Positions 1 to 60,139 of a stretch of DNA of 64,000 nt are shown here, one piece after another. Both the position numbers and the translations under genes were made by a program. Position 1 is the first letter of the stretch. Every line of letters starts with the position of its first letter. This DNA comes from Botryllus schlosseri (lineage: Eukaryota). The stretch is taken from NCBI GenBank assembly GCA_051294905.1, contig JBPPKV010000017.1:806001-870000 (forward strand), in the 5' to 3' direction. The notes beneath the pieces were generated by a model that saw only the letters and a program-made list of their open reading frames with translations, made no database searches and was not told the origin of the DNA.

Positions 1-299
1 GATCCACAATATTTGTTATTAACGTATACTAGTCGCGCAAAGTGTTCAAATCGTATTCGATACAACTTGTCCGTATTGCTCTTCGCCTAAACTTGGTGCC
101 TTATGGGGTGGCGCCATGCCATGATATTCTCTAAAACGGGGTCTTCTAGTAAACAAAGGGTTTATATCGCATTTTCATATCAATGCTATAATTTACATCT
201 CATCTCCTCGGATGCATCAATACGAATCAAGCTCTCTGCACCTTCTGCATAGCTCAATTTGCAGCTTACAGTCCGTGCGAACGAATTAAGACTGTTTTC

Positions 300-469
300 A
301 AAACTACTTACTTACTTGAGTAGATTTAAAGTCGGTCAATTCTACTTCTACTTCAAGTAGTTTTAGGCTGCTTATGGGAGAAGTACTTCTACTTGTACTT
401 GAGTAGATTTTGTCGTCGCTACTTCTACTTCGACTTGAGTAGCTTTCTTGACTACTTTGACCACCTCTG
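300..469. mobile_element. End of MITE family F (CTACTTCTACTTGAGTAG subterminal repeats)
   Basis: Ends CTACTTTGACCACCTCTG. Related pieces occur at ~9590-9673 and, inverted, at 60366-60450. Confidence 0.7.
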
Positions 470-1016
470 GTGATTTCGCGCTATATTTCTTATTTCGTCG
501 CGTCATTAACCTACCAAATCAATATAGTTTGCGCTGCTGTAAATTGCCTATAGAACTACCCTGTTGAAGTACTGAGATATCTCAATCATAGATGGGACCA
601 CCGAGATTGGCGTTACAATATTTCCGATAAAACATCAAAGATGTGTCGGTGTTGATGTTTCGACAGATTAATGCTACGATGGCGCATTGGTTTCATCGCC
701 TGGTATGGTTATCTGAATTTCAATCATAAAAAGTGATGTAAATCTATCCAAATACCACTCGACAAATTAAGAATGTAAACAGTGAGTTTGACCGCATAAA
801 CTACTCAATTAGAAACGGAAGTAATCTACAACCCCACTGCATGAGTGTAATGTGTATAACATTAACAAAGATATTGGAATAAATGAAATATGGCATTACG
901 GATCATATTATGTGGAAGACGACAAGTCTTAAACTGATTGTGAGAAACTGTGTCATAATGAACAAGGATATATCACATTTTTACTTCAGTCACCGACGCA
1001 GTGCTGCGGTACTTAC

Positions 1017-4000
1017 GGATGCATTTTGGTAGTTCAGCCCTCCAGTTGCCGCCACGACCGCAAGATACTTGCTGATACGCTTTATTGAGCTTGTATCCGC
1101 GGCTGCAGTAGAACGTGATCTTTTCCCCGTAAGAGTAGGAGTATTTATTCCCCGGGTAGAAGAAGGCGTAGGAATAGGGACGGGGAACGCCGCAGTTTTC
1201 TGGAATACGAGTATATTGTGTTACGATTAGAGCATTTAATTTTGAACAGCCACATAAAATTAATATTTGCAGTTAGTGAATTTCCCACCCACCCCCCACC
1301 ATAGCGAATGAATATCGGTAAATTATCCCCACAAACATCCACCCTCTTAATTATCAGATAATTATAAACTGGTCGTGTTCTATTAGGCTACTTTCCCCAT
1401 CCTTTAACGAGTATAAAGTCAGGCGAAGAGTATGTTTCGTTATGGAAGTCAACACAGTTTTAGTTACCATACTCAATTGCTTTGTAGTGTGCACTATGAC
1501 ATTTATTGTAGCGATGCATTGTGCTTTCACTTTTTTTGGTACTGTCCGACTGCATCGGCGTCAGGGCGTGTTAATACAGTCACTGGGGCAGCTGGTACAT
1601 ATAGGTTTATCAGCTACATGAAATTATTATTTACACAGTCTCCCATTAGAAGTATTTAAAATACGTTGTTGGCTATTGTTTGCTTGTTTGGTGTATTCGT
1701 CTATTTGTCCACTAGTACGGTCGTTGGTCAGTGGTCACTTACACCTGGCCGATAATTTTCATTTTTATTCCGTAACTGCCGACTTCTAGCGCGGCCCACT
1801 TCTAGGATTGTTATAAGACCGCTTACGCTGGTTAGATGGCGAGGAGGAGCCAAGACATACCTTAAGCACTTAAGTAGGAATTGTTTGTCGGCTATATATG
1901 AACAATTGAGCATGGAGATCGTATAAAGTTAAAATCGTGTTCTCATCATCATTTTGTGGATTTACTTCCAGATCAAGCAATCACCACATCGTACGGAAGC
2001 TTATAAACATCAGACACGGTTTCTCAATAAATGATTATATCGCCCAAAGTAGCGGTAGGCCTATAACCGTTTAATTATTCGAACAAATGCTCATTGAGAC
2101 TTGCTGTGACACTAATATTTACAACCGTGTTTCTTTTAGTCAATCAACAGTTTCAACTTGTCTCATTGCTTTGAATGTGTTATCCAAATCACTTACTGTT
2201 GCACATGGGGGCCTTGTTATCCCAGTTTCCGTCATCCATACATGTCATGTAGGAATACCTGGAACCGTGGTACGACATTTGGTATTCTGACTTGCAGCGG
2301 TATTGCACTCGCTCGCCCTTGCGGTAGTACATTTTCATTGGATAGTAGTACCCGTGCATTACATCGTTTCCCATGCAGTACTCTGTAAATGAATCAACTT
2401 TTGTAAAGGATGTAATCTAATTGTTGCGGACATGATACGAAACCTATTCGGTAATATGATTTAAAATAAAAAATCTGTTCCATACAAAGCTACTATAGCG
2501 AACCAAGAGTGAATTGCAGAATGCAGAATCTTACCCTTGCACTTCTGCGGCTCGCCGTCCCAGTTTCCGTCCTTCATACACTTCGCGTGTTTGCGGTAGT
2601 TGGCAGGGGCGTAGTACCCGTAATCGCATTCAAACTTGATGTATTCGCCTTCCATGTATCGCATCTTGGAATACGCCACGTGGTTGTAGGCGCGGTGATC
2701 TGGCACTTTGCAGTATTCTTAAGGGATATCATTCGGATTAGCATGGCAAAGTGCGTGAAAGCGGATATACTTAATTGGGAAAAGTTGAATACGCTGTTTA
2801 TATAGCCTACAAAATTATCTTGCAAGTATAAATATAACAGTATCTGTGTGGGCTTTCTTTGCTACACCCAATACGTTGTGGTCGCAGGACCATGGGTAAA
2901 CAGAGTATATTAACTTGTGCACGCAAATACCATTTCCTGCCCATATTCTGTTAGATTTGTTCCGAAAAGCGTCAATTGTCCTCCATGACAATATCTGATA
3001 TGATTCCGTAACATGAATGCTGAATTTTACCCAAGCAGCTAGACATTCTATCATAAGCAGAGGATCTGATAGATTAATACTATCCACAGAGAAGTAGCAG
3101 GTTGTTGAGAATTTTTGACGGATTCTATATAGGATAACATATGACCGGAACGAGCACCACCTTAGTCTATTACCTAATACCTACACGCACGGATAAGATA
3201 TTGTACGCGAACATATAAACTTTGTGCGATAATTGGGCAGGATAGAAATACTTTCATTAAACTCCGTAAATTCTTACTGGTTGGCATCCTTTTGCACTTC
3301 GGTAATGTGTCCCAATTGCCGTCCATCTGGCAGGAAGAGTAATATTTCATCATCATTCCCTCGTTGTACTTGTAATACCCTGGTTTGCACTTCACGTATA
3401 TCTGGTCTTCGGTGTCGTAGTATTTCATCTCGGGTTCGTAGTAGCCGTGTTCTACCATTGGCGGGGAGCAGTATTCTGAGAAAGATGGTATTCTGAACTG
3501 ATTGGGAATATGATTACTTGAGTTCCACAAAACGGCTCTCGTAGTCAATTCTGCTTTGACCCTTGATTGCAATGATTCGAATATACAATAAAGATTGAGT
3601 GTTCATGATTACCAGATCTAGCCCTTGTCCATACAATAACTCTGATTACAGGTAGAATTGTCATTTCAATCGAGCGCGTCATTTCAACCGTAGACATAGA
3701 ATGTTCAATTCGTTGGATGATTAACACAGGGCGATGCATATCATTTAGTTTTCGGTAACCAATTAACTTGTTCTTTTTGATAATAACTTGGAGTCGACTT
3801 TTATTAAAATATGCCAACCTATTTACTACCAACAAAAGGAGTTCATGTACCACATAAATATAGTACCTTGAACTTGAACGAAATCTTCACCTCGATTATC
3901 ATTCGTATTTTCATGTCGGTGACGTCATGCTTGGTGATTGGATTGTTGATATACTCTGTTCTTTCTACTTCTCAACTAGTTTTTTTATGTCATAATGACC

Positions 4001-7000
4001 AGTAAATAATTGACTGGTAATCGAACCGTTCAGGAAGGTACTGAGACACCATAGGATTTGTATGGCTGGGGAAAATCGATTCCTAAACGAGTGTTAAGCT
4101 TGTGGTCGATTATTTGAGTATCACTCATTATGACATTTTAACTATAGGCCTACAATGTGTCTACTCTACACTTGAATTTCAGTAGCTGCCCGGATATTCG
4201 ATACATACTTTTACCGATCTTCATACACTTGGGTTGCTTCCGAGTCCATTTTCCATCTCTACCGCAATAGTTGTAGACGTACGCGTTGTCATCATGGTAC
4301 TTGAGTCGGTATCCAATAGCACACTGGTAATATACTCTGTCGCCCGGTTTGTAACTAGCCTTCATCGGTGAATAGACGCCATGTGGTACCATCATATGCA
4401 TACAAGAGCCTGTAAACGATATGATGATATTCGTCGGTTAGAGACATCGGGCTAGTTCGAAATGCATCTACTCCTAGTGGTGCTACCTCAGTACGAGTAG
4501 CCTAAAAGTAGTGGTCTCAAAGGCGTGTCAAAATACTCCAATTCGAAGTAGAAATGGGAGGTTTGAAAAGTATTCAAGTTTCAAAACGTAAAATAGATTA
4601 AAGCGTCGCATAAATATTGTAATCAAACTGAGGTAATCTATTTTCCATATAGAAAAATGCATTTTGATACCATCGCAATGACGAATGACTATTGAAAGAT
4701 TTACGATTCAGGACAATGGTCGAATAAAATATTGAAGTACAGTCACAAAGGACTCTCTCACTCGTGAAAGTGATACAAACCTATCAAAGAACTACTTTCC
4801 GCTTCACAGATTCTGAGGAGTAACTAATTCAGTGCTTTGGTACTAAATCTGTCGGGAAAAAGAAGTAGCCTCGCGTATAAGCATTGAAATTTGAGCACGT
4901 AGTCTGAGTAACCAATGCCTGCTTGAGTACATTAGTAGAATAATTTGGTGACTGATACTGATCGTCTCCAACGGTAAGATGCCATAGTATATGTTTAACA
5001 TTATAAACGCTTCAAACGGAGTATAATGTTTGATACCTGCTGTCATCTTCTTGCACGTTGGCGGCTTCATGTCCCACATGCGATCCTGTCCACAAGTCGC
5101 GTACGAATAGTATTTGCCTTCGTAGTGCTTGTAATATCCCTCGTTACACTTGAAACGGAGTTGGTTACCGACGGAGTACATTTTCCTGCTGGGCTTGAGT
5201 GTGCCATGTTCGAATTTCGGCATTTTGCAGTACACTGTTATCGGAAAATACTAGTCACGCCTTCAGCAGGGGAATGTCTTTGTAAAACATCGGGTAAGGG
5301 TCAGCAAGAAAGCAGACACATTAGAATTACACCAAATTAATCAGTAATGTTTTAGTTGTTGAGTAAGTGCCGCCATAGTTGCTGTAGTTACTATTATACG
5401 TAGAAAAAGTCGTCTCGATATGGAGTTGCAATTTCCGATTATATATATATATTACCCGCTACTGGGCAAAGCATTTGCTGTCTTGTCGTAAGACGGCAAG
5501 TAAATAGTGGTAACACTCTCGTTCGGGACTTGGTCTATATCTCACTAATTGGATAACCAATTTCCTCTTCGTATTTGGTCAAATGAACATGCACGGACAA
5601 AAACGCTGTATGTCAGCATTGTATAATCTTATAGCCTAAAAATAAAATTTCGCTGCATTTCAGGCGATTTCAAATTTTGCCAAAATGATTTTCGGTTGCG
5701 ACTCGTACCGAGTATAATATATTTTAGGTATGAGAGTGTGTTAGATTTCGGTCTTGTGTCAAATAATACTGGTATCGACTAAACGATTCAAAAATTAAAT
5801 TCATAACTTGATATGGCTGTTAGAATAATCGCAATACATACAGTCTACGGTAACGTTACATTGGCCAACCATTCGACGAGAAGAGCACAGGTTCACATTT
5901 TAAAGGACCACATTAAAAAATCTACACGGGATAAGGATTCAGAATTTTTTGCGAAACTGGATTTGGAAATGGAATTTTCAATAATATGAAATTTTCGTGT
6001 TATTACTAACTACTTTATGTGCAGGAATATTCTCGGAATATAGTTTCGATTAACAACAGTTTGACCACTGATTATAAATCGCTCGTAATACTTCCATCAA
6101 CCTACTTTTCTTCATATCCAAGCACTTGGGTGATTTGTACTTCCATTTCCCGTCCATGCAAACGTTATATTCGTATTCTTCTCCTCTGTAAGATTTCTTG
6201 AAGCCCCTGGCACATTGGTAGTAGAGCTTCGAACCTTGTTGATATCTTTCAAACATCGGCCAGTATGATCCATAATAAAATTCCGGCGCGTAGCAATAGC
6301 CTGCAAACAATGGGAACAATGTACACCCAGGTAATTTTAGTCGGCGCCAAACGTACTCATCATCGCCTTCTTGCACATCGGTGGTTTCCTGTCCCAATAC
6401 CCGCCCGGTTTGCACGTAGCGTAGTCGTATCTCTCACCCTCGTAGTAGAGCTTGTAACCGTCTTTGCATTTGTAGCTGACTTTCTCGCCGTACGCATATT
6501 TGGATTTGGACGTCATGACCATACCGTGTTCAATCACGGGAGCATCGCAATGAGCTGAACATAAGTGTGCCGTGTAGAGGTAAGCAATATTTTGCTTTAA
6601 GCTAATTATATGTATCAGCTACTCGATTAAAATCATTGTTAAATAAAACTTGAAGGTTTTAAAATGGGGCAAAGCCGTCAGCATTCCAAGCATACATCTT
6701 GCAATCTTGCATTAACATAGCATTCGAGATTTATTAAAACCCTCCTTCACTCTATTCTGACTTCAGCATTTAATTTTATAGGAATTCGTTTTGATGCTAA
6801 AAGCTATAAGCCAGGGGTGTCAAACATAGGGCCCGCGAAGCTAAGATTGCTAAATTAAAATGATTATATTAGTTCGCACATTTAATTCCAAAGTTCTCTC
6901 TCGACAGCAAATGCGAAGTACGCTCACTGCTCATATACCAAATTATAACATTCTGGCGGCAATGCTGCGCTTTCATAAGTAGCAAGTCGGTGACATTGGT

Positions 7001-10000
7001 ACCAAATAGTGAGGCGGTTAGGAGAAACGCAAGCCACCAGTTCAGTTCATGAACCGAAAGCTAGTCATTCACAGGGACGAAAACGCCATTGTTGAACATA
7101 ATGCACGTAAACCTTCATTGTGCTCGAAGAATACAGTGTAAATATCTGCGGGTGCGCTTCTCGGAGGAAAACGGTCCCCGGCCGCAGTAACTCATTTGAT
7201 CCGTATTATATCCAGCATTCATGCCATTCTAGATTATATTTTAGTTGTGCTTACATAATTATTTAGGCTCCACTTTCATGAGTGAGTTTAATGCTTCCAA
7301 GTTTTTTATCATAGAGTCAATGAGTTGGGTTTCATTGCTAAATTCCAATTTCGTTGGTATGGATATATATAACTACGCTGTCGAGTTAAAATCTGTCACG
7401 TACGTTGATTGCAGTTTGGGCTTCAATGACATCATATGCTGAGCAAGAGAAGCCTATACTAGTAATTAATACGCGGCAGTGATCCTTAGATTTTCATACG
7501 TAAACCCGAAGCAGCTACGGCCTGTAAAAATGAATTCTCACGGATATCACACTTTAGTCTGTGGACGTGAACTCAGTTTATTAAAAAACTGCATTAACGT
7601 CATGATAGATATCGGCAATAATGCGAAGACAAAAGTAGCTTTGACTCTATATTTTTGTGATCACCGTGACAGTTCATACAAGCCATAGGAAAGCTAGATT
7701 ACAATTTAATACGTAATACATATTTTGAGGGTGAATAGAAACGGAAGTCCGGGTACCACGATCTTGGGTTTCACGAAACAGGTCTCCATACCTTTCGTGG
7801 CCAATTTGCACATTGGATGCATGAATTTCCAATTTCCATCGCCCATACATATGTTGTATTCAAACCAATCTTCGCCGTACACCAGCGTGTATCCTTCCTC
7901 GCATTTGGTGTAGTAGAGACGATCTCCTGCACTGTACAGCTTCAATGCCGGCGTGTACTTTCCATGCTCGAAATTCGGTGGGTTGCAGTAATCTGTAGCA
8001 ACAAGAATTTTCAGTCGAGACACGGTTTGTTTTGAATGGATCGCTTTGATTCACAAAAATGAAGCGTCATCTGTATAGTAGGTAGTAGACACAATTTACC
8101 AGTGATAGTTACCTTTATTTTCGTTACCATCAAAAGATCATTATTTCCTAATATGTTCTATTATCAAATGTAATGGCAAGAAAGAAAGAATGCAGACTTA
8201 CCCATCTTGTGGCTTTTGCACATCGGCGGATCTTTGTCCCAAATGCCATCTCTTCGGCATGTAGCATACTCGTACTGATCCTTCCAATAATACATACCGT
8301 ATCCATAATTGCACTTGAATCGCAAACGGTCCCCATAGTTGTATCGCCTCATTTTAGGGTGGTACATGCCGTGCATGATTTTCGGAGAGTAGCAGTAATC
8401 TGAAGGAAATCATTCAATCAACTAAGCCAACCGGGAAAACGTATTCACCACATCTCGTCTTCAGCTATTGTTTGGCATTGTGTGACATACAATTCGCTCA
8501 ATAGACGTAGGCTTAGACTGCGTAGACTTTTCAGGGTGATTGGAAATCTTACTTTTGTGCGCAGATTTGCACATGGGCGGCGGGTGATTCCACATTCCGT
8601 TTTCGCACATGGCGTAGTCGTATTTTTCCATGTCATAATGCAATTTGTAACCTTCGTCGCAGTCATAGTACACTTTTTCTCCGTCTTTGTACCAGCTTTT
8701 GTTCGGTCTTCGTTTGCCGTACATTACGTCATGTCCCACGCAACCAGCTGAATTCAATATGGGATGAATCATTTCGAGAATCTAGCGAAAGTAGCCTACA
8801 ACTGTCCAAGCCTACTTCGATGAATCTAAATTGCTTGTCCCGCAGATTAGTACGCTTTTGAATTTATGACGCTTCTGTACAATATGTCTATATTATCTAT
8901 TGTAAATGTCTAAGAGAAACGACAAAACTACTCTAGACGCCATTTTGTATATGTGACGCCATATTGCTTTTCAAAAAGAAAGCGTCATCTGTTCGCATAT
9001 TTCCTGCTTATGAGTATGATAATTAATATATATATATTATTACTCTTGTAGAGTCCTGTCAAAGAATCCGTTTCTATATAGACTCAGTTTGAGGAACTAA
9101 GTAAAATACTTGACGAAAATTATAGGAGGAAACCTCTTGAGAATTAAGTTCAAATAACTGAAAACCCGTATTCCAAGCAGAAAAAAGCGGCGATAATAAG
9201 GTTCATATCACATACTTCTATAACACGCATATGCGTTTTTGAAATTTTATGTTGGACAATTTATATCCATCACGTTATTGTGGTTTTGTGATATTCCGAC
9301 GATTTATATGTTTAATTTTGAGTGAAATATAGTTTGTTGAGAAGTTTGAATCGATTTTAATAATGAATGCCACACGAATTGTGCGATGAAGGTGCTGTAC
9401 CTGCCCACTCCAGCTGAATATATTTTTGAAGATCGTATGCATCTGTAAGGTCAGTCAGTTGGCGTTAGTCTGAAAGATCTCTTAACTTCGGAAGTAGCCA
9501 CATACGTTGCCTGCTATAATTATGCGAGCTCTCGGCCAAATCTAGTCTTAGAACTTTTATTACTTCAGTAATTCCTAGACCTATTATTTTTTCACAAGTA
9601 ATTGAGTACAAATTTAGAGCATAACTACTACTTTTACTACTTGAGTAGCAACGTTAACCACTTTGGCACCTCTATAAATTAAACAGTATCAATAACATGT
9701 TGAAAGCATAAAGGTCGTGCGCATATTGTAAATGCGGTTACAAAATATGTATTTAGCAACAATATAAATGCCTTACATCCACTAGAGTGCTTCATGCTCT
9801 TGCACTTGGGAGGATCGAAGTCCCATTTACCATCTTTGCCACAAGTGCGATATTCATACCAGTCATTTTCGAAAAACAGCCCGTATCCCTCTTTGCATCT
9901 GTGGTACATTCTATCTCCTTCCGTATACATTTTCATGTCAGGGAAATGATAGCCATGTCCGACCATGCTCGGCATGCAATATTCTGAAACGTAGTGGGAA

Positions 10001-13000
10001 TTTTGCATTTGTTAGCGTTCGGACATGATGGGATAGTTCCATATTGGCTGATATCGCATTGAAAACTCACTCATATTCATGGGTCTGCATTTAGGTGCTT
10101 CGAAGTCCCAGTTTCCATCGTTCTTGCACGTGGCGTATTGAAACCAGTCTTTGTCGAAGAACAACTTGTATCCGTCCTTGCATTTGAAAGATATGCGTTC
10201 CCCTTTCTGGTATTTCTTTTTCATGGGCATGACCATTCCGTTGAAGTCAGGTTTCTTGCACATTACTGATAAACATTTAATTTGGATATATCTAGAGCAG
10301 GTACTTTCGTTTTGATATTAAGAAACAGTTTATTCAGAAAAGGACTACGGCTGATACTTCTAATGTAGCAAAACTTCAAAGATTCCGATTTCCAAGTCAC
10401 ATGTTGCTTAACCATAAATCAATTTCACGAATCCATCTATATCGCCGTACTGAGGGAAGACAAGCACTCAAAAGTTTTCCAATTGTTCGTTTTCGAACAT
10501 TAAGATGACATTTTCCTTGCATTCATCACAATACACTTTTGACAACAACACAATTGACGAAATTATATTAAACGCTGATCCAATTGTAGTATGTCGGAGT
10601 ATAATGTCAATTCTAGTGAGAATATAGGAATTGGGTGATGGCGTGCCACCCGAAATTGTCGCAATTCTTTCAAAATATTTTTATAGAGCGTTGATACACA
10701 TTCCTCATATTTTTACTTGATATAATCTTGTAAATTATGGCAACAATGAAATTCCAAGGGTCAAGTTAAATACTGGGAATGGTGGGAACCTCGGAAAGGT
10801 TCAGGCTCGTGTGAACACGAACCTTTTAAAAGGTTCTGTGTGAACGCGAACGTGAAACTCATGAAGTCACGTGACGTCATATTGCTAATTCCAACCCTAC
10901 ATTTCAGTGAAGTGATATATATTAATATACACGATACCTAACTACGACTCGGGCCACATAATGCCACAATGCTGAAGTACATACTGACTTTTCAAACGTC
11001 GCCAAATGTATCATCAGGGACAATCAAATGATATAATGATTCCATAACATCAGTATCTTCCGCCGCTTTGCCAACAATTTCGACGAGTACTTGCAAGGAA
11101 ATATAAGCTTAGGCTTTAACGGTCTAGGCCAGACCGGACAATGTATTCGGCGTCTGAGTGTTGCTACGTTGATGTTGAGCAGAGTGTGCTATGGGTTTTA
11201 CCCCATTTACAAGTTCTACAGCATCTAGCCCACACCCAAATCGCACGGATTTGGTTTTTATGACGCAGTGAAACATGAAATCGGGACGGACCCCGTACGC
11301 TTGCGAGATTTGTTATATCAGATAACGGTATCAATTTAATTGATTGGTTGAATAAGCGTTATTCGCTGACCACCTGTAGCGTATTTCGCGCTTGATGTTG
11401 TGTGATACAGTGATTGCGGGTCAAGCTTACAGCAGAGAGTCACTAAATATTCACAAACACAAAGTTGGATATTTCGAGCAAACTATTTTGACAAAGCATG
11501 TAAAATTTTTGAGATTGTGAAGGTGCATGCTCGATTAGTGTTGATTTTTTATGCTGCCAGCGCCATGCATAGAGTGGCCCGTAGTTGAAATGTGATAAAT
11601 CTCAACCAATGATGTTATAATGACGTGAAAATTGTAATATATGACAAAGGTTCACAGTGCAGAACCTACCAAGGTTCGTTTGTGAACGTGGACCTCTAAA
11701 TTTCCGAGGATCACACACAGAACGCGAACGTGAACCTCACGTTCTCACCATCTCTAATAAATACCCAATTGCTACAAAATACGAAAGTTAAGTTAATGCT
11801 GAACAGTTGCTATCAGCGCCACAAAAAGTACGAGCTTGAAACAGAATGGTATAGAATGCGCTCAAAGCTTCCCCATAACAACGAACGGTCACCCGTCAGG
11901 TAAAACTGTTGTATATACCTTGTTTCATTACGCATCTGGGCGGCATGAAGTCCCACATCCCATTTTTCATGCAGGTAGCGTATTCATACCATGGTCCGTC
12001 GTAAAATAGCATATATCCTTCGTCGCATTTGTAAGACACCCTGTCCCCGTAATAGTAGTGATTCTTGTTAAGCTGTGGCATCCCATGCTCGATCATTGGT
12101 TTTTCACAGTACTATGAAAAATTGAGATGCCGGTCAATATTCCATACAGGCGCCATTTTAAGTGTTGCAGCATCATTCATTTAGGATAATCTCACGTAAA
12201 AACGCGTATTCCTGGCGTACGGCATGTGATTGTATTTCACATGCTTCGGAGCCGTAGATTTTTCTGTAATGGACGTAATTAGGGTTGCATTTAAAACAAA
12301 AATCAATTAGAAACAAACATGTTTGAAACAAGGCCCTAATTTAAAACATGTTTTTTATTTTTTCAAGCCTTGACGTCTCGAATATCCAATTGTGACATCA
12401 TAATGGAATTTACATTGACAGATGAAAATATAGGGTGAATATAGCTCCTTTGACGAAATATCTGTACTATAACTGTTGAACCGACTATTTTGAGGGTTGC
12501 AACCATCCGATACCGATAAACGTCGGCTAAATTGGGCGGTAATTGTCCGTAGGCTCATACAACATATTTTTCGGAGATTATTTACCCAGTTATGGCATAT
12601 TTTACAACTTGAAAAAAAATGGTAAAATGCCTCTGTTTAAAACACAGTTTAAAGCATGTTTTAAACAAAGTGTTTTAAAACACGGTTTGTTTTATATGCA
12701 ACCCTAGACGTAATTGTGCATCTGATGATTGTAGGGAGGCAATCCAAGCCGGGACAAGTTACGTTTCTACGAAATATTGCTTACAAAATCTTATAATTTT
12801 CAAGTAATGGTAGATATAAAAATTCTAATCGGCGTACTATAAGGGTTCTCGAAAAAAAAAAGTATTGTTTCATTGTATAACACAATGTACAGTTACTCGT
12901 CAAATTTAAAGTTACAAACATAAGTATAACCATGTCCCTGCCCTACACCTAATTTCCTATCGCACTCACTTGCACTTTCACATTTATACGGCATATTGTC

Positions 13001-15591
13001 CCAATTGCCGTCCTTCATACAAGTTGCCCACATGTAGCCATATTTTTCTGGCTTCTTGTAGCCGTCCATGCAGTAGTAATAGATCTTGTCATCGTGCATG
13101 TACATTTTCTTAGCGTAAGACTTGTGATGATTCATCATGTGATCCGGAGCACTGCAGTATTCTAACAATAATACATTGAAAATATGAGTTTGTCGAATAC
13201 ATCGCTGTTTTCAGATGTCCCGGCTTTATGATTAAGATTCGTCAAATTTCCATAAAATGCAGTTTCATTCATTGCAACAGCCACTGTATAGTCAACATTA
13301 CAAATGTAGGGAGTAGGCGTTGCATTGGATCTAGCTATTTAGTTTTGCTGGAATAAGCTATTTAATGAACCTAGCAATGCTATTGAATTGTTAGCTCATT
13401 TTATACCAACTTTGATTATTACTATTTATATTATAAGACCAAATTACCCATGGAATTAAATGAACTGTAAACAATTCAATACCGGGTAATAAATTTCTGT
13501 AGTTTAATAATCAATCAACGCTTGATAGATGCATGGTTCGTTTATCGCTTGTACGTTAGAATGAAGCTTTGTAATCCGCCATATTTCTGATTTATGGGTG
13601 CGAAGGTCATGACAGTCAGGGGTAGACCATGGGCATTGCTAATCGCGACCTGATACTGCAGTAAAGGGATAATACTTACTTTTGCACATTGGAGGTGTCC
13701 TATCCCACATTCCGTTGTCTCCGCACTTCATGTAATCGTATTTTCCCCCTTCGTAGTATTTATAATACTTATCGGGACACATAAAGGTAACTTTCTCGCC
13801 GTAGTAGTAGTGGTCCTTCATGGGTTCGTATTTGCCGTAGTTCATTTTGGCCACCTTGCAATAATCTGACTCAATAAACGACGATAAATTATACTGTGGT
13901 ATGACGCAACGAGGTGCGAACGCATTCATTGACTCCCCGCAGACTCCTTACCGTAGCATTTTGACGCCTGCTTCCATTTTCCATCCATTTGACAGGTCGA
14001 ATACGTATGCTTTTCTCTATTTCCTGGGCAGCCATAATAGAGTTTGTCATCGTATTTGTAGCCAGCCTTGTCCGGATAGAATCGACCGCCGAAGAATGTT
14101 CGAGGATGTGCGCAAGGCTCTGAAATATTTACGAAACCATAATGACTACGCCCTTTGTCTTCAGCGTCGTGACTTTTACACGGCCACAAGGCGCCTGTGT
14201 TGGGAACTCGTTACTACCTTCCAGTCACTGCTGCATATTTGTAATCCGGTAGAGTCAGTTAAAAGTCACGCAATTTTCGAATCGTGTCAAGACAAGTCAT
14301 CTCGCATTCGTCAATTTCCAGTTGGTTTCACCCCACCATATATCTTAAGCGTCTCTTGTCTGATTTTAATCTGCGGATCCTAGACCACGCCGAACTATAT
14401 AGTCAAACTTGGTTTTCTACGATTTCTAAACCACCAAGTCGATGTCTGCCACAGCTACGGTTGCATTCAAAACAAGTGGTCCCTATATGACAGGGGTTGG
14501 AAGCCTATTTCGTCAAAGAAGCTTTATTTGACCCTATATTTTCAAATGCGAATATAAATCCAGTATGACGTCATGACTCCGAAAACAATGTTTTAAACGT
14601 GTTTGTTTTAAATAGATTCTTGTTTTAAACACAGCCCTAGTCACAGCGGTAGTGTATGTATACGTGTCCGAACGAGAATTATGGTTACAGGTGCTCCTGT
14701 CGAATTAGTATGGGAGTGTAATTCAACGTAAGCTACGTTTCATGGCAACAATTTAGCATATAAGGCTATAAAGGCCGACCTCATATTTGCAGAGAGAAAA
14801 ATTAAGGTTTGAGCATATACCAAATGTCGTCGAAATTGCTAAGAAAGGATCAACTTTGTATTTTACACACCTGATTGAATATATTTACGCATGGTTTCAA
14901 TGATATTAGCCAACAATACCTGTAAACGTCAATATGGCGTCAATTAAGGCTAGCCGTAGCTGGTTTACCTCGATGTCGCCGCTGCTAACACTAATGATAT
15001 CGAAATCGGAAACAGAAATAGAATTCAAAACATAATGGAATGATTTTTATCGCATGCCTCAAGTTGAATATTTGATGACTTGAAAATTAGATCAAAAAGT
15101 CTGCATCCGATTCGCGAGTTAATCCAAACTTGTTAGACCAGCTGTCTGAGTAAAGCCAAGTTATTTTGGGGCGGTGGTTGTCAAGCCAAGACCAAGGTAA
15201 TGAGATGCAGGCTGCTCTACTGTTAGCTTCCTGATTTAAACGTTTACATTCACGGAGAAAGTTATACGTGGACTTACTATTATCGCTACTGGTATATATC
15301 ATCCTTCAGCGGGAAATATCCGATTCATTAAATTTGACCTTATTCGAAGTGGAGAAGATAGTATTACCCAGAGTTTCACTGTACGCCTACTACTTTAGGC
15401 CTACTTACTTATGCACATTGGCATATCAGAATCCCAATTGTTTGAGCTATCGCAGTTCAGTCGTTCTTTTCCTTTCATCTCGTACCCATCCCAGCATTTG
15501 ATCCACACGGCACTACCGGATGGATATTTACCTCCACGCATGTCATGTGATGACCGCATTGTGGCATATTTCACATTAGGTTTGTCGCACG
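1017..15591 (-). CDS. Multi-exon CCP/sushi (SCR) repeat protein, >=18 tandem modules, Tyr/Met/Lys-rich; 5' and 3' ends not resolved
   Basis: Each exon encodes one C-x-C-x-C-xxxG-x-W-x-P-x-C module with canonical AG/GT sites. Exons are phase 1-1 except one linker pair. In transcript order: 15591-15409, 14119-13952, 13865-13680, 13161-12970, linker 12263-12196 (phase 1-0), 12111-11919 (phase 0-1), 10265-10071, 9983-9777, 8747-8553, 8399-8202, 7992-7792, 6554-6357, 6300-6106, 5234-5037, 4409-4215, 3475-3278, 2717-2535, 2382-2197, 1199-1017. Exons 15591-15409 (ACDKPNV...CWDGYEMKG...CDSSNNWDSDMPMCI) and 1199-1017 (ENCGVP...CSRGYKL...CGRGGNWRAELPKCI) are missing from the ORF track and were translated by hand. 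Confidence 0.92.
10774..11756. mobile_element. hAT-type MITE family B (GTTCACGTT subterminal repeats)
   Basis: TIR ~TAGAGATGGTGAGAAC. TSD TTAAATAC/ATAAATAC. A second partial copy lies at 51969-~52360. Confidence 0.85.
12280..12706. mobile_element. hAT-type MITE in CCP gene intron
   Basis: TIR TAGGGTTGCAT..AAAACAAA. Perfect 8-bp TSD GACGTAAT (12272-12279, 12707-12714). Confidence 0.9.
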
Positions 15592-17649
15592 CTGCAAGAG
15601 TAATACATGTGATTAGTTAGTACACGATAAAAGTTCGTGTGAAACGGGATTTTGGTGTGGGAAATCGCTATATAAAATCTAATATTTTTATTCACATAAT
15701 AATTCCAGTATTGGTTGTAAATATGTTTTAGTATATCTGTCAATTATCGAGTTAAATCACCCAATAAACTGAAAAATCTGAAGGAATCTTCCCAAGCAGC
15801 TATTAGTAATATTGAGGTTGATTCATTACAATTTACGCTGGTTCGCTCATCCTGCGGATAGCCCGCGTGTTGATACGCATTAAGTTTGTTTACTTGCCGA
15901 TGTTTTATTCAAAATCAAAAGTGTTTAGCATGTAGTTGCCCGTGGCCGGGCTCAGTGCATAGTGTTTCACAATGCGGTTGCTTACAATCAAGTGAACTTA
16001 ATAAGTTATAGGCCACTTACCAAGACATATTTGAATGATCAGTGCCACTGCGATGCAACTGAATAAATTGATCATGGTTGATTCTTCCGACTCTCGTTCG
16101 GATCGAAATCCACTTGTATATTCCGTTACCAAGACCAATCAAGGCAACTTGATCAAATGAGGTTTATCCTAGCATATATACACTTTGAGAAGGTCACGTG
16201 ACAAGTATGCCCTCGGGTGAACGTGATCTTACCGGTTATTTGCAGAATGTTTGAAAACGCAGATTCGCGGTAACGCCGGCCAATTTTGCATACGAATACA
16301 ATCACTTCAAACCGAGTCGTGAATACAGACAACAACGTTGGATGACTTGCATTTGGGCGAAATGTGTTTTTTTAAACTTTGACACGAATCAGGGAAATTA
16401 TAGATACAACGTGTACGATGTAAACGTATCCACGGGTACCGTTCCGAAGGATTACCAGAATTCAAGTTCATAACCACAATGATTTTGCTGTTTCGCTCAT
16501 ATGAATTGGCCTAAAACCACTTTCGTTCTCATCGATGTGATTCGCATGTAATGGAACATTTAGGTTCGCACGGATGGAAATTTCCCCGACAGTTTATACT
16601 GTGTTTAATTATTGAAAAGAAGAATTCTTTGAATGTGTGAAAAAGCATGGCGTATTTGCCCATCCGTCGAGATAAGATACCTACCAACCCTGAAAGTTTC
16701 ACGGGGTGTGTTGGTATGATCCGAACCATTGCATTTGTGTTTCCATCCACTTCCATAAAGTATTTGCCGAATGCAAAGATGGCAATAATAAAAGCGGTCT
16801 TGTTTTATTGAATACCCAATAGTATTAGCTTACAATGGCTGTTATTTTACTAAGCTTTTTTGTTTCCTACTGCAACCTTAATCTGAAGTATTTTGACTTT
16901 ATTTGAAAGTACTATTTCTAATTTACTTACCTGAGGACAGCATCACTTTTTATGTCATCCGTGTAGCACCAGTAGTCGAGTCCTCTCAATATAATTCGAT
17001 GCTGCTGTTCAATTACCATGGTTTTATATTATGCTAGAGTTTAAGCAACAACCAAGTGTTCGGTAGCCAATAAATCTCGACAGTTCAATTCGAATTTCTA
17101 GTTCAATCCGTTACTAAGCTCTCGGTCGCAATTTCTTGACACATGTCATCGGCAAATACCACACGGAAGTATTGGACTGGAAAGTATTGAAAATTATTCA
17201 TATACTACAAAACGTTCTGATATCGCAATTATTTGCCTCTGCAGTTTGGTGTAATATTGATATGATTGTAAATCTATGAAATAAATCTACTTTAATCCCT
17301 TCGCTTAGTATCCGACGCTGTATAATGGTTTGGAATATTTTGACCGGAGATATATAGTAGCCATTTGTAAAGTTGTCGGAAAACTAGGACAGTTTTTCTA
17401 AGCAAAAATTCAACATATTTGACCATTTGTAAGAGTCTATGGAGTATTACTATGGCAACCTATGTGATGTATTGCATTTAACCTGAAGCACTCGGGAAAT
17501 AAAGTACATATGGGCATATCGCGAATTTTAGGATTAAACAGAACATGTATAGTTAGTAATATATTCGTGCATGTTGTCGTATGCATGTAGGATTACTTTT
17601 CGAAACTATCAAATTTTCCTACACAACGTGGCGTGAATTTCATTTTGTC

Positions 17650-19690
17650 AAAATCATGGCACGCAATCGAATCAACTGCGCACAGTAATTCCTCGTAGAG
17701 AGATTGTACATGGGCGACTGTAATCGTGAGCGAGGAAAATACATTTTTAGACATTCTTCCATTTTGTTGCGATAAATACACCGATCGGTTGGAGAACATT
17801 GTTCCGTCGGCGTACTTAACTTTGTAAAACTTACTGCATGATCACTGATCAGTGATCACTGCACTCGTAACCGTTTCAATCTATTTATTGAAACTGCAAG
17901 TACATCAGGGGCATAGTGATTATTCTCTCTTTACGTGCTGATCTCGACAAAATTATCGTTGTTTTTTATTCTCACCTTACTTACATTTACTGCTACATTC
18001 ATCCCAACTCATGCTTAATGGGCTGTACCAGCTGAGATACACCCCGTTTGTGTTGCCGCAGGAATGGTATATTTGAGAGAATTTGATGCAGGTCCAAGCA
18101 GATGTCCGTGATAGAATTGCTGTGATGTAACATGGTGGAATATATATCAATTCATAAATTAGTCGGCTTTCTGGTCGCGTAGATAACGATATCTCACATA
18201 ATTTGCAACCCTAGTAACGTGATGTAATAGTGCCAATATTTCGCAACGTTATTCATGCATTTGCAGACACAGGCTCATATGCGACCGATGCCTGTAAACG
18301 TGATTTTTGTCCAAATCAGAATTTTGGGCAGGTTTTCGGTCGATCACAACTACATAGCACCATTTCATACTCCATTGTTCAACCTCCAACCTATGGGATT
18401 CATCGTAGTTTCCTCGTTGCGAAATGTGCCAAATTAAACGTATATTTCTGTCTCAGTGATAAAAATATTTCCCCGCACACCAATTAAATTCATGTTATCT
18501 TGTTATCGCCATTTATGGTTTTTGAGCCTTGATTTCATGTCCTTATCGTGATAATATCTTATTTCCCGGCTCTTGATTTTGTGCTATTATTGACCATTGT
18601 CCATTTCGCTTACACAATTTTTGACTGTGGTTCAAAAGACCATCAGGTGATAAGCATTCAATTTTTTGTTTAATGAACAACGACAACTGCATGGCGTGCG
18701 TACCAGTATATGTGGTTAAGATTAATCGACAAACCAGTAACTCTGATCGGTAATTATACTGTAATAAGAAGATTTAATTTTATCTTGTCATTGGCAGCTA
18801 CAAGACACGACGATAATAACATACGAAAAAGGCATAGTGCCACTTCGTACTAATGTTCGGTGAAATTAAATATGTATTTTATGTGTAATTTTATTCCAGG
18901 AATTTGTAAATACTCTATATTTGAGCACTTCATTCGCGCAATCACATTGTATTAAAACCAGCGTATTGTATTATCCATAGCTGTTGGCCTATTCAATGGC
19001 CGCAATTCGAAACAAAGCATTGCGTACGGTGTCTCCCACAAGAATGTATATAGAGTATGAACAGAGACGATGGAAAGATGTATCATATACATGTATCAAT
19101 ACGGGCCATACTACAAAGGCAGTACCTGTATCACAAAACCCATATAAATGGTTTTCATTTTGTATCCAGACCAGGGTAGCTTGCTAACCAGTTCTTCGTC
19201 GCTATTGGAAATTAGCTACGTGGCATAAATCCTACAAATAGTCAGACCCATGCATTCGTTGCTCAACTAAACCTCCAAATCCATGCGCGCCCCCAATATC
19301 GTACGGAACTCGTTATTTTGCAGCTTGGATCCAAATAAGAAGTATGGTAAGTATAGAACACCTGAAAGCAGGGAGTGTCGTAGTCGCTCATCGCTTAAAC
19401 TACCCACTGCTGCCTACCAAGTTACTAATTACTATAGATGGCGTGTGGGTGTGGGGTTGGCTTTCCGCACAGCGACGAGGGATTCGTGTTCCAGTCATCA
19501 TGGAAGGAATGGTGTGGTACTATATTACCCTTCCAGTAATACTTACAAAGTCTATCAATATAGGTATGCCATCAAGTTTTTGCACTAGAATACATTACGG
19601 TTAATTGGGAAATGTATGGATGGCATCGTTCAGTGCTTCTCAAACGTTTTGTATATGTGTCCTATATATCGCACATTTTTACCTAGTTCG
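17650..19690. repeat. Arm 1 of ~2 kb inverted segmental duplication (partner ~25150-27140; third partial direct copy ~20300-21150)
   Basis: Collinear shared blocks, e.g. TTTGCAGACACAGGCTC, CACATTTCGCAA.GAGGAAACTACGATGAATC, AAAGACCATCAGGTGAT, GGCCTATTCAATG and GGGAAATGTATGGAT...CAGTGCTTCTCAAACGTTTTGTAT. Confidence 0.85.
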
Positions 19691-27140: not shown

Positions 27141-27634
27141 AGAATAGTATTTACGGGGGCAAATTGTTTAGTTATTTATTATAGATCTACCTCCCGTGAA
27201 TACTATGATTTGATATCTTAAATTTGGACCTCAGTAACTTCGCGTCCGCTGATTGGAAACGAGCCAATTTTGTAGTGTAACGTGTTTTTTTTAGATAGCC
27301 TATCCATGTTAACAGGCAGCTAGTAAAATTTAAAATAGTTGATTTTGAACATTCCTTCATTATTCATAGCTGTGTGCAAAATGCTTTCGATAAACGGCTA
27401 ACTGAGGTTTTTTAGTTCTAATATGAATTATTGACACTGTAAAATAGTAATATTGCTTTAGATCGGTATATATTCTCTTTGCTCAATTAAATCATCTCTA
27501 ACTAGTTGAATCATAACAATCGATACTCCACTCATATTCAAGTAGGCTACCTACCATACAATCGATCCAATGTCTCGGTCGTATATTGTGTGAAAGTCTT
27601 CTTGACAATTGGCTGATTGCCTTTCGTGTCGCAG

Positions 27635-59446: not shown

Positions 59447-60139
59447 CAGTCTAGAGTCTAGACCAGGGGTTCTCAACCTCAATATTGTTTCATATTATAT
59501 TGCCACTCGTGATTTCTAACCATCAGTTAGCGAGTGAAGGGCTGTGATTCAAACGTATCAGTAACGATTTTGAATTGTTATCGTAAGCGGTATTGTGATC
59601 TGTGTGAAATGCAGGTAATTATGCACGCATATCGAATCGCTATTCGAATAAGATAGTGCAGAAGCAGTTGGTCGGTTTTGTGAATTGACTTTCAAACATC
59701 GTTGTCAATTCGGTTTTTACTACCGCTGTTTGATGACACAAAGTGGATACTGTCCTGAACGTTTTGCGACTGTCGTATGATAGATTACACTGTGCGGCGT
59801 TTAACATCGGTAATTCGAGTATACAGATATGAATTCCTGGCAATGCCAAATCTGCCAAAAATAAAATCGGAAAGATGCCAAAAATAAGCTATTTTTGGTA
59901 GTTTTGGCGTATGCCAAAAATAACACGACCTGCAAATCAGTGCCCAGTCTCATGATGAAATAAATGTCTGTACACCAACCTTGGCTCGTTTCGCTGTACA
60001 GTTTTCATAAAATATTTTCAGTTGAATCATAAGGTAGGTTCGAATTAGCTTACTGGCATTTCGCTTTAATTATCTATAGTCTACGCAATCGTGTCTTCCG
60101 ATTACATCCAGAGGACAGGCATGTAGCGTATGCTACTGC

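What the first reader, a model, noticed from the sequence alone, without database searches (positions are those of the whole stretch)
1017..15591. 18-module sushi/CCP protein with extreme Tyr/Met/Lys composition - candidate structural, adhesive or redox-active protein rather than a standard complement regulator
Seen: exon 2382-2197 has 11 Tyr and 8 Met in 62 aa; exon 3475-3278 has 11 Tyr and 7 Met in 66 aa; exon 13865-13680 has 12 Tyr in 62 aa. Runs such as YYY, YYKYY and MMMKYY recur. Established: typical complement-regulator CCPs (factor H, CR1) do not show this bias. Tyr/Lys-rich secreted proteins are substrates for DOPA or dityrosine cross-linking in marine adhesives and cuticles, and surface Met can scavenge oxidants. 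Inference: this may be a sushi-fold scaffold repurposed for cross-linking or oxidant buffering, for example in tunic, adhesive papillae, egg coat or haemocytes.
Basis: partly seen in the sequence, partly recalled or inferred. Interest (0 to 1): 0.78.

Follow-up and report, generated by a model that had tools for sequence, protein, structure and literature searches.

The report
Tyrosine-lysine-methionine-rich sushi-repeat secreted protein
This sea-squirt gene encodes a secreted chain of 18 "sushi" modules whose outer surfaces are packed with tyrosine, lysine and methionine; it belongs to a small conserved gene family that no paper I found describes, and it looks more like a cross-linkable building or glue protein than an immune regulator, though that role is untested.

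Summary
The spliced frame is open (1153 aa): Tyr 13.7%, Lys 12.1%, Met 7.8%, Leu+Ile+Val 5.8%, pI 9.0. Among 1344 modules from the 148 best sushi-array proteins of a 1.84-billion-protein library, none has at least 7 Tyr and at least 3 Met; 12 of 18 modules here do.

The extra Tyr, Met and Lys sit at positions that are normally polar, so probably on the surface. The gene is one of at least four full-length paralogues in this genome (dN/dS 0.13-0.18). Colinear orthologues lie in Styela clava (Tyr 17.8%, Met 5.4%). Tyr positions are conserved between species (82%); Met positions are not (26%), although Met content stays high.

Spliced transcripts exist, but they carry the letters of the chromosome-1 copies. 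The window copy has a mutated splice acceptor (AG to AT) at exon 5.

There is no specific orthology to any characterised complement regulator. The best reading is an extracellular, phenol-oxidase or peroxidase cross-linkable matrix or adhesive protein (about 0.4); this rests on composition only. It is a new variant of a known kind. The scan has only this same first-reader note on this stretch.

The parts
16021..16075 (-). Candidate first coding exon: ATG plus signal peptide MINLFSCIAVALIIQICL(A), with donor G|GTAAGT in phase 1
   Evidence: It is the only hydrophobic ATG-to-phase-1-donor candidate with a consensus GTAAGT donor in the interval homologous to the C1-B upstream region. The ORF, ATG and donor are conserved in paralogues C1-A (99%) and C1-B (89%). 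No read joins it to exon 1, so this is an inference.
15409..15591 (-). CCP exon 1, the least biased module (3 Tyr, 5 Met)
   Evidence: spliced joint 14119/15409 in RNA-type contigs
13952..14119 (-). CCP exon 2, a short module
   Evidence: joints 13865/13952 and 14119/15409
13680..13865 (-). CCP exon 3 (12 Tyr, 6 Met, 10 Lys)
12970..13161 (-). CCP exon 4 (10 Tyr, 8 Met)
   Evidence: joint 13161/13680
11919..12113 (-). CCP exon 5. In this copy the acceptor dinucleotide (12115-12114) is AT instead of AG. A cryptic AG two bases in would give a stop after two codons.
   Evidence: The joint 12113/12970 is seen in a contig. C1-A, C1-B and C1-C all have AG at this site.
10071..10265 (-). CCP exon 6 (12 Lys)
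9777..9983 (-). CCP exon 7
8553..8747 (-). CCP exon 8
8202..8399 (-). CCP exon 9 (11 Tyr)
7792..7992 (-). CCP exon 10
6357..6554 (-). CCP exon 11
6106..6300 (-). CCP exon 12 (12 Tyr)
5037..5234 (-). CCP exon 13
4209..4409 (-). CCP exon 14
3278..3475 (-). CCP exon 15 (11 Tyr, 7 Met); this module was folded
   Evidence: AlphaFold2 pLDDT 89.1 with a CCP fold, TM 0.74-0.81 to factor H CCP5
2535..2717 (-). CCP exon 16
2197..2382 (-). CCP exon 17 (11 Tyr, 8 Met)
973..1199 (-). CCP exon 18 (1199-1017). If the GTAAGT at 1016 is not used, a short basic tail ...CIRKYRSTASVTEVKM follows, with the stop at 975-973.
   Evidence: The read-through frame is identical in C1-A. Styela clava P0079 ends with a similar short basic tail. 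No downstream TM exon or AATAAA signal was found. The 3' end is therefore unresolved.

Best explanation
The locus encodes a secreted, basic (about 140 kDa, pI 9.0, net charge +64), almost unglycosylated chain of 18 CCP/sushi modules. The disulfide/Trp/aromatic core of each module is kept. About 5-6 extra Tyr, 4 Met and several Lys per module occupy positions that are polar in ordinary CCPs, so they are presumably solvent-exposed.

The gene belongs to a small family of head-to-head and tandem paralogues in styelid sea squirts, and that family is under purifying selection.

The most likely function is inferred, not shown. It would be an extracellular material-forming protein: a multivalent scaffold whose surface Tyr are oxidised by phenoloxidase or peroxidase (to DOPA/quinone or dityrosine, perhaps with halogenation). 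Its Lys, His and Met would serve as nucleophiles or partners for quinone tanning, cation-pi cohesion or redox control. The site of action could be tunic, wound plug, adhesive or egg/larval coat.

The window copy is a recent segmental duplicate of a chromosome-1 gene. Its splice-acceptor lesion at exon 5 may cause in-frame skipping of that module, or truncation.
For: Shown here:
- 18 Pfam Sushi modules in phase-1 exons, with an open spliced frame of 3462 nt.
- A conserved signal-peptide exon.
- A confident CCP fold for a module with 11 Tyr and 7 Met.
- Composition unmatched in 1344 background modules.
- Extra Tyr at profile columns 26, 37, 42 and 44, and Met at columns 6, 8, 15, 48, 52 and 59. 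Background modules carry T/S/G/E/P/N/Q at these columns, while the core columns 19, 25, 27, 33 and 53 stay canonical.
- pI 9.0, net charge +64, and a single N-glycosylation sequon.
- dN/dS of 0.18, 0.14 and 0.13 against three paralogues. 114 of 116 Tyr are conserved at dS 0.27.
- Colinear Styela clava orthologues with Tyr 17.8, Lys 11.8, Met 5.4%.
- Between species, Tyr positions are 82% conserved. Met positions are only 26% conserved although Met content stays high, which points to selection on a bulk surface property.
- Spliced family transcripts exist.

Context from papers:
- Stolidobranch ascidians deliver phenoloxidase (Tuphoxin) from morula cells into the tunic (PMC9395347).
- They use DOPA chemistry in holdfast adhesion (PMC13079984).
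- Methionine-catechol adducts in tyrosinase tanning are cited in PMC9395347 (reference 6).
Against: - No modification, tissue, cell type or enzyme partner was observed.
- Read depth was low in the four runs examined.
- Lys-Tyr adjacency, which is typical of mussel adhesives, is not enriched (z 0.1).
- The known ascidian DOPA materials are small peptides or non-CCP proteins (PMC13079984).
- The strong position-specific conservation of Tyr would also fit a specific binding surface.
- The own-genome CCP composition baseline could not be computed.
Confidence: 0.4

Rival explanations
1. It is a humoral recognition or regulatory CCP protein (complement-regulator-like, opsonin or allorecognition-related). 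The Tyr-rich surface would then be a sticky, antibody-paratope-like binding face rather than a cross-linking substrate.
For: The CCP-array architecture is that of RCA proteins, and the best PDB sequence matches are CR1, factor H and CR2. NCBI names the Styela relatives 'C4b-binding protein alpha chain-like' and 'complement factor H-like'. Tyr positions are strongly conserved. Multi-copy, rapidly duplicating clusters are typical of immune genes.
Against: The similarity is only the generic scaffold, at 4-32 bits per domain. There is room only for a 15-aa tail, so no C4BP-type oligomerisation domain. dN/dS of 0.13-0.18 shows no sign of diversifying selection. Met and Lys enrichment with positional turnover fits a bulk property better than a defined interface.
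Confidence: 0.2
2. It is a metal-binding or redox-buffer protein. Surface Met and His would bind Cu(I), or Tyr and Lys would bind Fe(III) or V. Alternatively, surface Met would act as a sacrificial antioxidant in blood cells or plasma.
For: Met and His are concentrated in the first third of each module (Met 38/10/29 and His 22/7/3 by thirds). [M/H]x1-2[M/H]x1-2[M/H] triplets are mildly enriched (z 2.2). Tunicate catechol-metal chemistry is documented (PMC13079984).
Against: MxM and MxxM motifs are not enriched (z 1.2 and 0.4). Only 26% of Met positions and 4 of 12 His positions are conserved between species, which argues against fixed coordination sites. The related Styela P0079 subfamily keeps Tyr and Lys but has 0.8% Met.
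Confidence: 0.15
3. This particular copy (the window, on unplaced contig C17) is a decaying duplicate or a mis-phased haplotype copy. The functional genes would then be the chromosome-1 paralogues.
For: The acceptor of exon 5 is AG to AT only in this copy, and the nearest AG gives a stop after two codons. The duplicated block covers only about 25.5 kb (C17:803,395-828,907; window -2,606 to 22,907) at 94-98% identity. The RNA contigs carry C1-A or C1-B letters at the diagnostic sites 14083, 13092 and 13148.
Against: All 18 exons are open, and dN/dS against C1-A is 0.18. All exons are phase 1-1, so skipping exon 5 keeps the frame. A contig is compatible with use of the AT site.
Confidence: 0.3
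4. It is an amino-acid store for Tyr and Met, analogous to insect arylphorins and Met-rich hexamerins. It would supply tyrosine for tunichrome or DOPA synthesis.
For: Tyr is 13.7% and Met 7.8%. Met content is conserved but Met positions are not.
Against: 82-98% of Tyr positions are fixed, and a costly disulfide-rich fold is kept. Observed transcript depth is low, which is unlike a bulk storage protein.
Confidence: 0.05

Closest known systems
Styela clava predicted proteins: XP_039261768.1 'C4b-binding protein alpha chain-like' and XP_077973294.1 'complement factor H-like' (P0079/P0151), plus the two flanking 1315-aa Sushi genes on OZ123521.1
   Same: The flanking genes have colinear modules (s1-w1, s2-w2, s3-w3 and so on), 52% identity, Tyr 17.8, Lys 11.8, Met 5.4% and a head-to-head arrangement. 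P0079 has a signal peptide, 10 CCPs, Tyr 12%, Lys 9.8% and 33% identity.
   Different: P0079 has only 0.8% Met and normal LIV (14.6%). None of these proteins has been studied; their names are automatic.
Vertebrate regulators of complement activation (factor H, CR1, CR2, C4BP, DAF, MCP)
   Same: Arrays of CCP modules with the same four Cys, Trp and aromatic core. The predicted fold has TM 0.74-0.81 to factor H CCP5.
   Different: Tyr is about 3-fold, Met about 7-fold and Lys about 3.5-fold above typical arrays, and LIV is one third. There is a 4-residue insertion carrying a Y-x-Y motif before Cys3. No specific orthology, no oligomerisation or TM domain, and almost no glycosylation sites.
Mussel foot protein 2 (mfp-2) and other DOPA adhesive proteins (from my own knowledge, not tested here)
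   Same: Secreted, basic, Tyr- and Lys-rich, and built of tandem small disulfide-knotted modules. This suggests the protein may work like a cross-linkable plaque or matrix protein.
   Different: mfp-2 uses EGF modules, not CCP, so there is no homology. DOPA is not shown here. Lys-Tyr adjacency is not enriched. High Met is not an mfp feature.
Ascidian phenolic materials: Halocynthia holdfast halogenated-DOPA peptides (PMC13079984) and morula-cell phenoloxidase Tuphoxin (PMC9395347)
   Same: The same animal group (stolidobranch ascidians) and the same proposed chemistry: Tyr-derived catechols cross-linked in tunic or cuticle.
   Different: The peptides are 1.5-2 kDa with about 50 mol% catechol. 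Tuphoxin is the enzyme, not a substrate. Neither contains CCP modules.

Membership tests
Sushi/CCP/SCR domain (Pfam PF00084) | Profile match above Pfam's gathering score | tested here: met
   18 of 18 modules match; first module 32.7 bits against a cut-off of 20.7; best E 3e-12
Sushi/CCP/SCR domain (Pfam PF00084) | Four invariant Cys, invariant Trp, and conserved aromatic/aliphatic core positions in about 60 aa | tested here: met
   C1, C32, C46, W52 and C59 are invariant. Core columns 19, 25, 27, 33 and 53 are canonical.
Sushi/CCP/SCR domain (Pfam PF00084) | CCP beta-sandwich fold | tested here: met
   AlphaFold2 pLDDT 89.1 with five strands. Foldseek TM 0.74/0.81 to factor H CCP5, and matches to MASP, C2 and CR2 CCPs.
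Regulators of complement activation (factor H/C4BP/CR1 type) | Specific sequence orthology beyond the CCP scaffold | tested here: not met
   Per-domain scores to CR1 are 4-32 bits. BLAST identity to all non-family arrays is 23-26%.
Regulators of complement activation (factor H/C4BP/CR1 type) | C-terminal oligomerisation domain (C4BP) or a TM/GPI anchor (CR1, MCP, DAF) | tested here: not met
   Only a 15-aa basic tail lies before the stop if read through. No TM-like downstream exon was found within the duplicated block. The 3' end is not confirmed by reads.
Regulators of complement activation (factor H/C4BP/CR1 type) | C3b/C4b binding, cofactor or decay-accelerating activity | not testable with these tools
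   Needs biochemistry
DOPA-type adhesive or tanning substrate proteins (works-like comparison, not homology) | Secreted, basic, with high surface Tyr and Lys | tested here: met
   Signal peptide exon; pI 9.0 and net charge +64; extra Tyr and Lys at normally polar columns
DOPA-type adhesive or tanning substrate proteins (works-like comparison, not homology) | Tyr converted to DOPA, dityrosine or halo-Tyr in the mature material | not testable with these tools
   Needs mass spectrometry or redox staining
DOPA-type adhesive or tanning substrate proteins (works-like comparison, not homology) | Expression in a matrix- or glue-secreting cell together with phenoloxidase or peroxidase | not tested
   The only reads call showed low-depth spliced transcripts in runs of unknown tissue.
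Met-motif Cu(I) binding proteins (Ctr1/CopC-like Mets motifs) | Enriched and conserved MxM/MxxM clusters | tested here: not met
   MxM z 1.2 and MxxM z 0.4. Only 26% of Met positions are conserved between species.

The most novel reading that the evidence does not exclude
Styelid sea squirts have evolved a dedicated sushi-fold counterpart of mussel mfp-2. It would be a family of CCP arrays whose surfaces are loaded with Tyr, Lys and Met to serve as the protein substrate of phenoloxidase/peroxidase tanning. The chemistry would include DOPA or halogenated Tyr, Lys- and Met-quinone adducts, and dityrosine. The material would build or repair the tunic, or glue the animal to its substrate. If so, this is a new class of cross-linkable structural protein in chordates.
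Probability: 0.3. Interest if true: 0.75.

Novelty: new variant of a known kind. Interest (0 to 1): 0.55.

Why it matters
CCP/sushi arrays are normally read as complement regulators or adhesion receptors. Here the fold is kept, but the surface chemistry has been rewritten (Tyr 14-18%, Lys 12%, Met 5-8%) and held by selection in several paralogues and in two sea-squirt genera.

If these proteins are the missing high-molecular-weight substrates of the well-known phenoloxidase/DOPA chemistry of ascidian blood cells, tunic and holdfasts, they would give a defined, recombinantly tractable scaffold for studying chordate "tanning" and underwater adhesion. They would also show that the automatic database names ('C4b-binding protein-like', 'factor H-like') mislead.

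If instead they prove to be binding or metal-handling proteins, the positional turnover of Met with conserved content is still an unusual case of selection on bulk composition in a folded domain.

Tried and rejected
- **Word-index searches.** A search with Styela P0079 returned only itself. A search with module 3 found no candidate. Short fragments or same-length relatives are therefore not in that collection, but length limits mean this says little about longer kin.
- **Own-genome CCP baseline.** I used a global background instead.
- **AT-mutation bias as the cause.** Rejected, because Ile, Phe and Asn are low.
- **Aliphatic core simply replaced by Met/Tyr.** Mostly rejected. Columns 7 and 25 keep V/I/L/F, and most Met sit at columns that are polar in the background.
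- **Lys-Tyr adjacency, YY, MM, MxM and MxxM enrichment.** Not significant.
- **Thyroid-hormone precursor or iodination scaffold.** A Tg1-domain protein has been identified for that role in Styela clava, and the paper never mentions sushi proteins (PMC12992692). I kept this only as a remote possibility.
- **Halocynthia holdfast DOPA peptides.** These are 1.5-2 kDa peptides and are unrelated.
- **Literature.** Searches for Tyr-rich sushi, ascidian adhesive or tunic proteins gave nothing specific.
- **Copy-specific expression.** Not obtained. The contigs and reads laid on the window carry the letters of other copies or alleles.
- **3' end.** No AATAAA/ATTAAA within 1.5 kb and no convincing TM exon downstream.
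- **Species.** Size (495.5 Mb), GC of about 40% and 16 large contigs fit the 496-Mb haplotype assembly of Botryllus schlosseri (PMC12448946). This is an inference only.

Full report
**What is in the sequence**

A scan for the four-Cys/Trp pattern finds 18 modules, all on the minus strand between 1021 and 15589, and none elsewhere in the 64 kb. Each module is one exon flanked by AG and GT(A/G)AG in phase 1-1. All 18 modules pass Pfam Sushi (PF00084). They share invariant C, Y, C, C, W and C columns.

After one correction to exon 5, the spliced sequence is 3462 nt, in frame and without stops, and encodes 1153 aa.

**Gene ends**

Upstream, 430 nt from exon 1, lies a short exon at 16075-16021. It starts with ATG, encodes MINLFSCIAVALIIQICL and ends at a G|GTAAGT donor in phase 1. 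Joined to exon 1 it gives ...CLA|CDKP, a plausible signal-peptide cleavage site. This exon, its ATG and its donor are conserved in two paralogues, at 99% and 89%. No read joins it to exon 1, so it remains an inference.

Downstream, exon 18 is followed by GTAAGT. If that donor is read through, the frame ends 15 codons later (...CIRKYRSTASVTEVKM, stop at 975-973). This frame is identical in the chromosome-1 copy and resembles the short basic tail of the Styela relative. I found no polyadenylation hexamer and no convincing membrane-anchor exon downstream. The 3' end is therefore unresolved.

**Is the composition unusual?**

Yes. The protein has Tyr 13.7, Lys 12.1, Met 7.8, Leu 1.9, Ile 1.3 and Val 2.6%. 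With the tail included it has pI 9.0, net charge +64, a mass of about 140 kDa and only one N-x-S/T sequon.

I built a profile of the 18 modules and searched it against 1.84 billion representative proteins. That search returned 8216 hits. The 150 best hits are large sushi arrays with medians of Tyr 4.1, Met 1.1, Lys 3.35 and Leu+Ile+Val 17%. None of them exceeds 2.3% Met.

Among 1344 complete modules cut from those proteins, the mean is 2.7 Tyr and 0.65 Met per module. None combines at least 7 Tyr with at least 3 Met, whereas 12 of the 18 modules here do. Low Ile, Phe and Asn rule out a simple AT-rich mutational drift.

There is indirect evidence only. The genome has more than 1000 candidate sushi exons, but only the paralogue clusters score above about 50 bits with the Tyr-rich profile.

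**Where the odd residues sit**

I aligned background modules to the profile and compared columns.
- The canonical core is intact: Tyr/Phe at columns 19, 27 and 33, Val/Ile/Leu at 25, and Trp at 53.
- The additional Tyr occupy the inter-module linker and columns 9, 12, 26, 37, 42 and 44. Background modules mostly carry N, T, G, S or T/E at these columns (column 12 is aliphatic in the background).
- Met occupies columns 3, 6, 8, 11, 15, 48, 52, 56, 59 and the linker, which are P/E/S/N/Q/T in the background.
- Lys occupies columns 24, 28, 30, 34, 35, 59 and 61.

The excess is therefore mainly at surface positions, not a re-coded core.

A module with 11 Tyr and 7 Met is still predicted with confidence (pLDDT 89.1). 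The model superposes on solved CCPs, with TM 0.74/0.81 to factor H CCP5, and also matches MASP, C2 and CR2 modules.

**A gene family under selection**

The window is G000:C17:806001-870000. Window positions 1-22907 are a 94-98% identical copy of C1:13,373,486-13,349,270. The homology ends there, and beyond it is only patchy. The window gene is thus either a recent segmental duplicate or a mis-phased haplotype copy of gene C1-A.

Next to C1-A, head to head, lies gene C1-B with 19 modules. Further on lies gene C1-C with 18-19 modules. More copies sit on contig C23, and single modules occur on C17.

All compared exons are open. dN/dS is 0.18, 0.14 and 0.13 against A, B and C, at dS 0.03, 0.27 and 0.52. 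Against C1-B, 114 of 116 Tyr and 63 of 71 Met are kept.

**Relatives elsewhere**

In the protein library the only specific relative is Styela clava XP_039261768.1, named 'C4b-binding protein alpha chain-like'. It has a signal peptide and 10 CCPs, Tyr 12%, Lys 9.8%, Met 0.8% and 33% identity.

Its genomic locus shows it is flanked, head to head, by two 1315-aa Sushi genes. Their first 12 modules are colinear with ours and score 33-86 bits (eight of the twelve at 69 or more) against our profile, against a maximum of 46 for any unrelated array. They contain Tyr 17.8, Lys 11.8, Met 5.4 and LIV 4.1%.

Across seven orthologous module pairs (52% identity), conservation differs by residue:

| Residue | Conserved positions (window count) |
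|---|---|
| Tyr | 42 of 51 |
| Lys | 23 of 54 |
| Met | 9 of 35 |

Both species nonetheless remain Met-rich. Tyr is therefore fixed by position, while Met (and partly Lys) is maintained as content with positional turnover. That is the signature of a selected bulk surface property.

**Transcription**

Contigs of two RNA-type runs laid on 11801-17800 join the exons exactly as predicted: 13865/13952, 14119/15409, 13161/13680 and 12113/12970. Depth is low. A bulk RNA-seq run gave a few reads and another gave none.

At diagnostic sites the contigs carry the letters of C1-A (14083 T) or C1-B (13092 C, 13148 G). A loose end reads the C1-B version of exon 6. Expression is therefore shown for the family, not specifically for the window copy.

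The window copy alone has AT instead of AG at the exon-5 acceptor; C1-A, C1-B and C1-C all have AG. The next AG would give a stop after two codons. Skipping exon 5 would keep the frame, because every exon is phase 1-1.

**What it most likely does**

Shown here: a secreted, basic, barely glycosylated rod of CCP modules with Tyr/Lys/Met-coated surfaces, conserved and multi-copy in styelid ascidians.

Inferred: it is a material-forming protein that phenoloxidase or peroxidase cross-links (DOPA/quinone, dityrosine, possibly halogenated Tyr). Lys, His and Met would act as nucleophiles or redox partners.

The inference rests on three things. The first is composition. The second is the known delivery of phenoloxidase from morula cells to the tunic in stolidobranchs (PMC9395347, whose reference list also cites methionyl-catechol adducts in tyrosinase tanning). 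The third is DOPA chemistry in a tunicate holdfast (PMC13079984). I put this reading at about 0.4.

Against it:
- No modification or tissue was seen.
- Lys-Tyr adjacency is not enriched.
- The known ascidian DOPA materials are small peptides.

Rival readings:
- A binding or immune CCP protein, about 0.2. The architecture and the fixed Tyr fit, but there is no specific orthology and no diversifying selection.
- Metal or redox handling, about 0.15. Met/His clusters are mildly enriched at z 2.2, but MxM motifs are not enriched and the sites are not conserved.
- Amino-acid storage, about 0.05.
- A thyroid-hormone precursor role is unlikely, since a Tg1-domain protein fills it in Styela clava (PMC12992692).

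**Comparison and novelty**

The protein is a true member of the Sushi/CCP superfamily; profile, Cys/Trp pattern and fold were all tested and met. It fails the tests for the RCA regulators: no specific orthology, and no oligomerisation domain or anchor. It may work like mussel mfp-2 (tandem knotted modules, basic, Tyr/Lys-rich), but it is not homologous to it.

Seven literature searches found no description of Tyr-rich sushi proteins. I therefore rate it a new variant of a known kind, with interest 0.55.

The genome's size, GC content and 16 large contigs fit a Botryllus schlosseri haplotype assembly (PMC12448946). This is an inference only.

Noticed in passing
window 12114-12115 (minus-strand acceptor of exon 5): AG to AT change in this copy only. 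Paralogues C1-A, C1-B and C1-C have AG. The cryptic AG two bases in would give Ile-Leu-stop.
   Followed up: partly
window 1-22907 vs G000:C1:13349270-13373486: A duplicated block of about 25.5 kb at 94-98% identity; the homology continues about 2.6 kb left of the window start. Beyond it, C17 carries ATAD2-like and titin-like genes while C1 carries an inverted paralogue. C17 also holds two patchy 87-93% copies of the C1 downstream region (C17:704660-731579 and 788075-803956).
   Followed up: partly
window 12200-12800 and 14400-14800 (introns): Interspersed repeats with very high depth in RNA-type contigs (thousands) and many rearranged joints. Probably a transcribed transposon family.
   Followed up: no
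window 1-469: A high-copy repeat: more than 40 copies at 82-98% identity on many contigs of the genome.
   Followed up: no
G000:C1:13328139-13343811 (minus) and 13280637-13308959 (minus): Two further full-length paralogues (19 and 18-19 modules). Gene B has an extra module between the counterparts of exons 4 and 5, and it lies head to head with gene A, 12.8 kb apart.
   Followed up: partly
G000:C23:60104-71397: A palindromic pair of partial family copies (modules at 60104, 61130, 62510 / 68809, 70186, 71215) on a small contig.
   Followed up: no
L052 (Styela clava OZ123521.1:5461525-5486642): The same head-to-head layout as here: a 675-aa Tyr/Lys-rich, Met-poor CCP gene between two 1315-aa Tyr/Lys/Met-rich CCP genes. 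The newer gene model P0151 ends differently from P0079, inside the last module.
   Followed up: partly
I saw only the AAA-domain ORF at 27617-28018.
   Followed up: no
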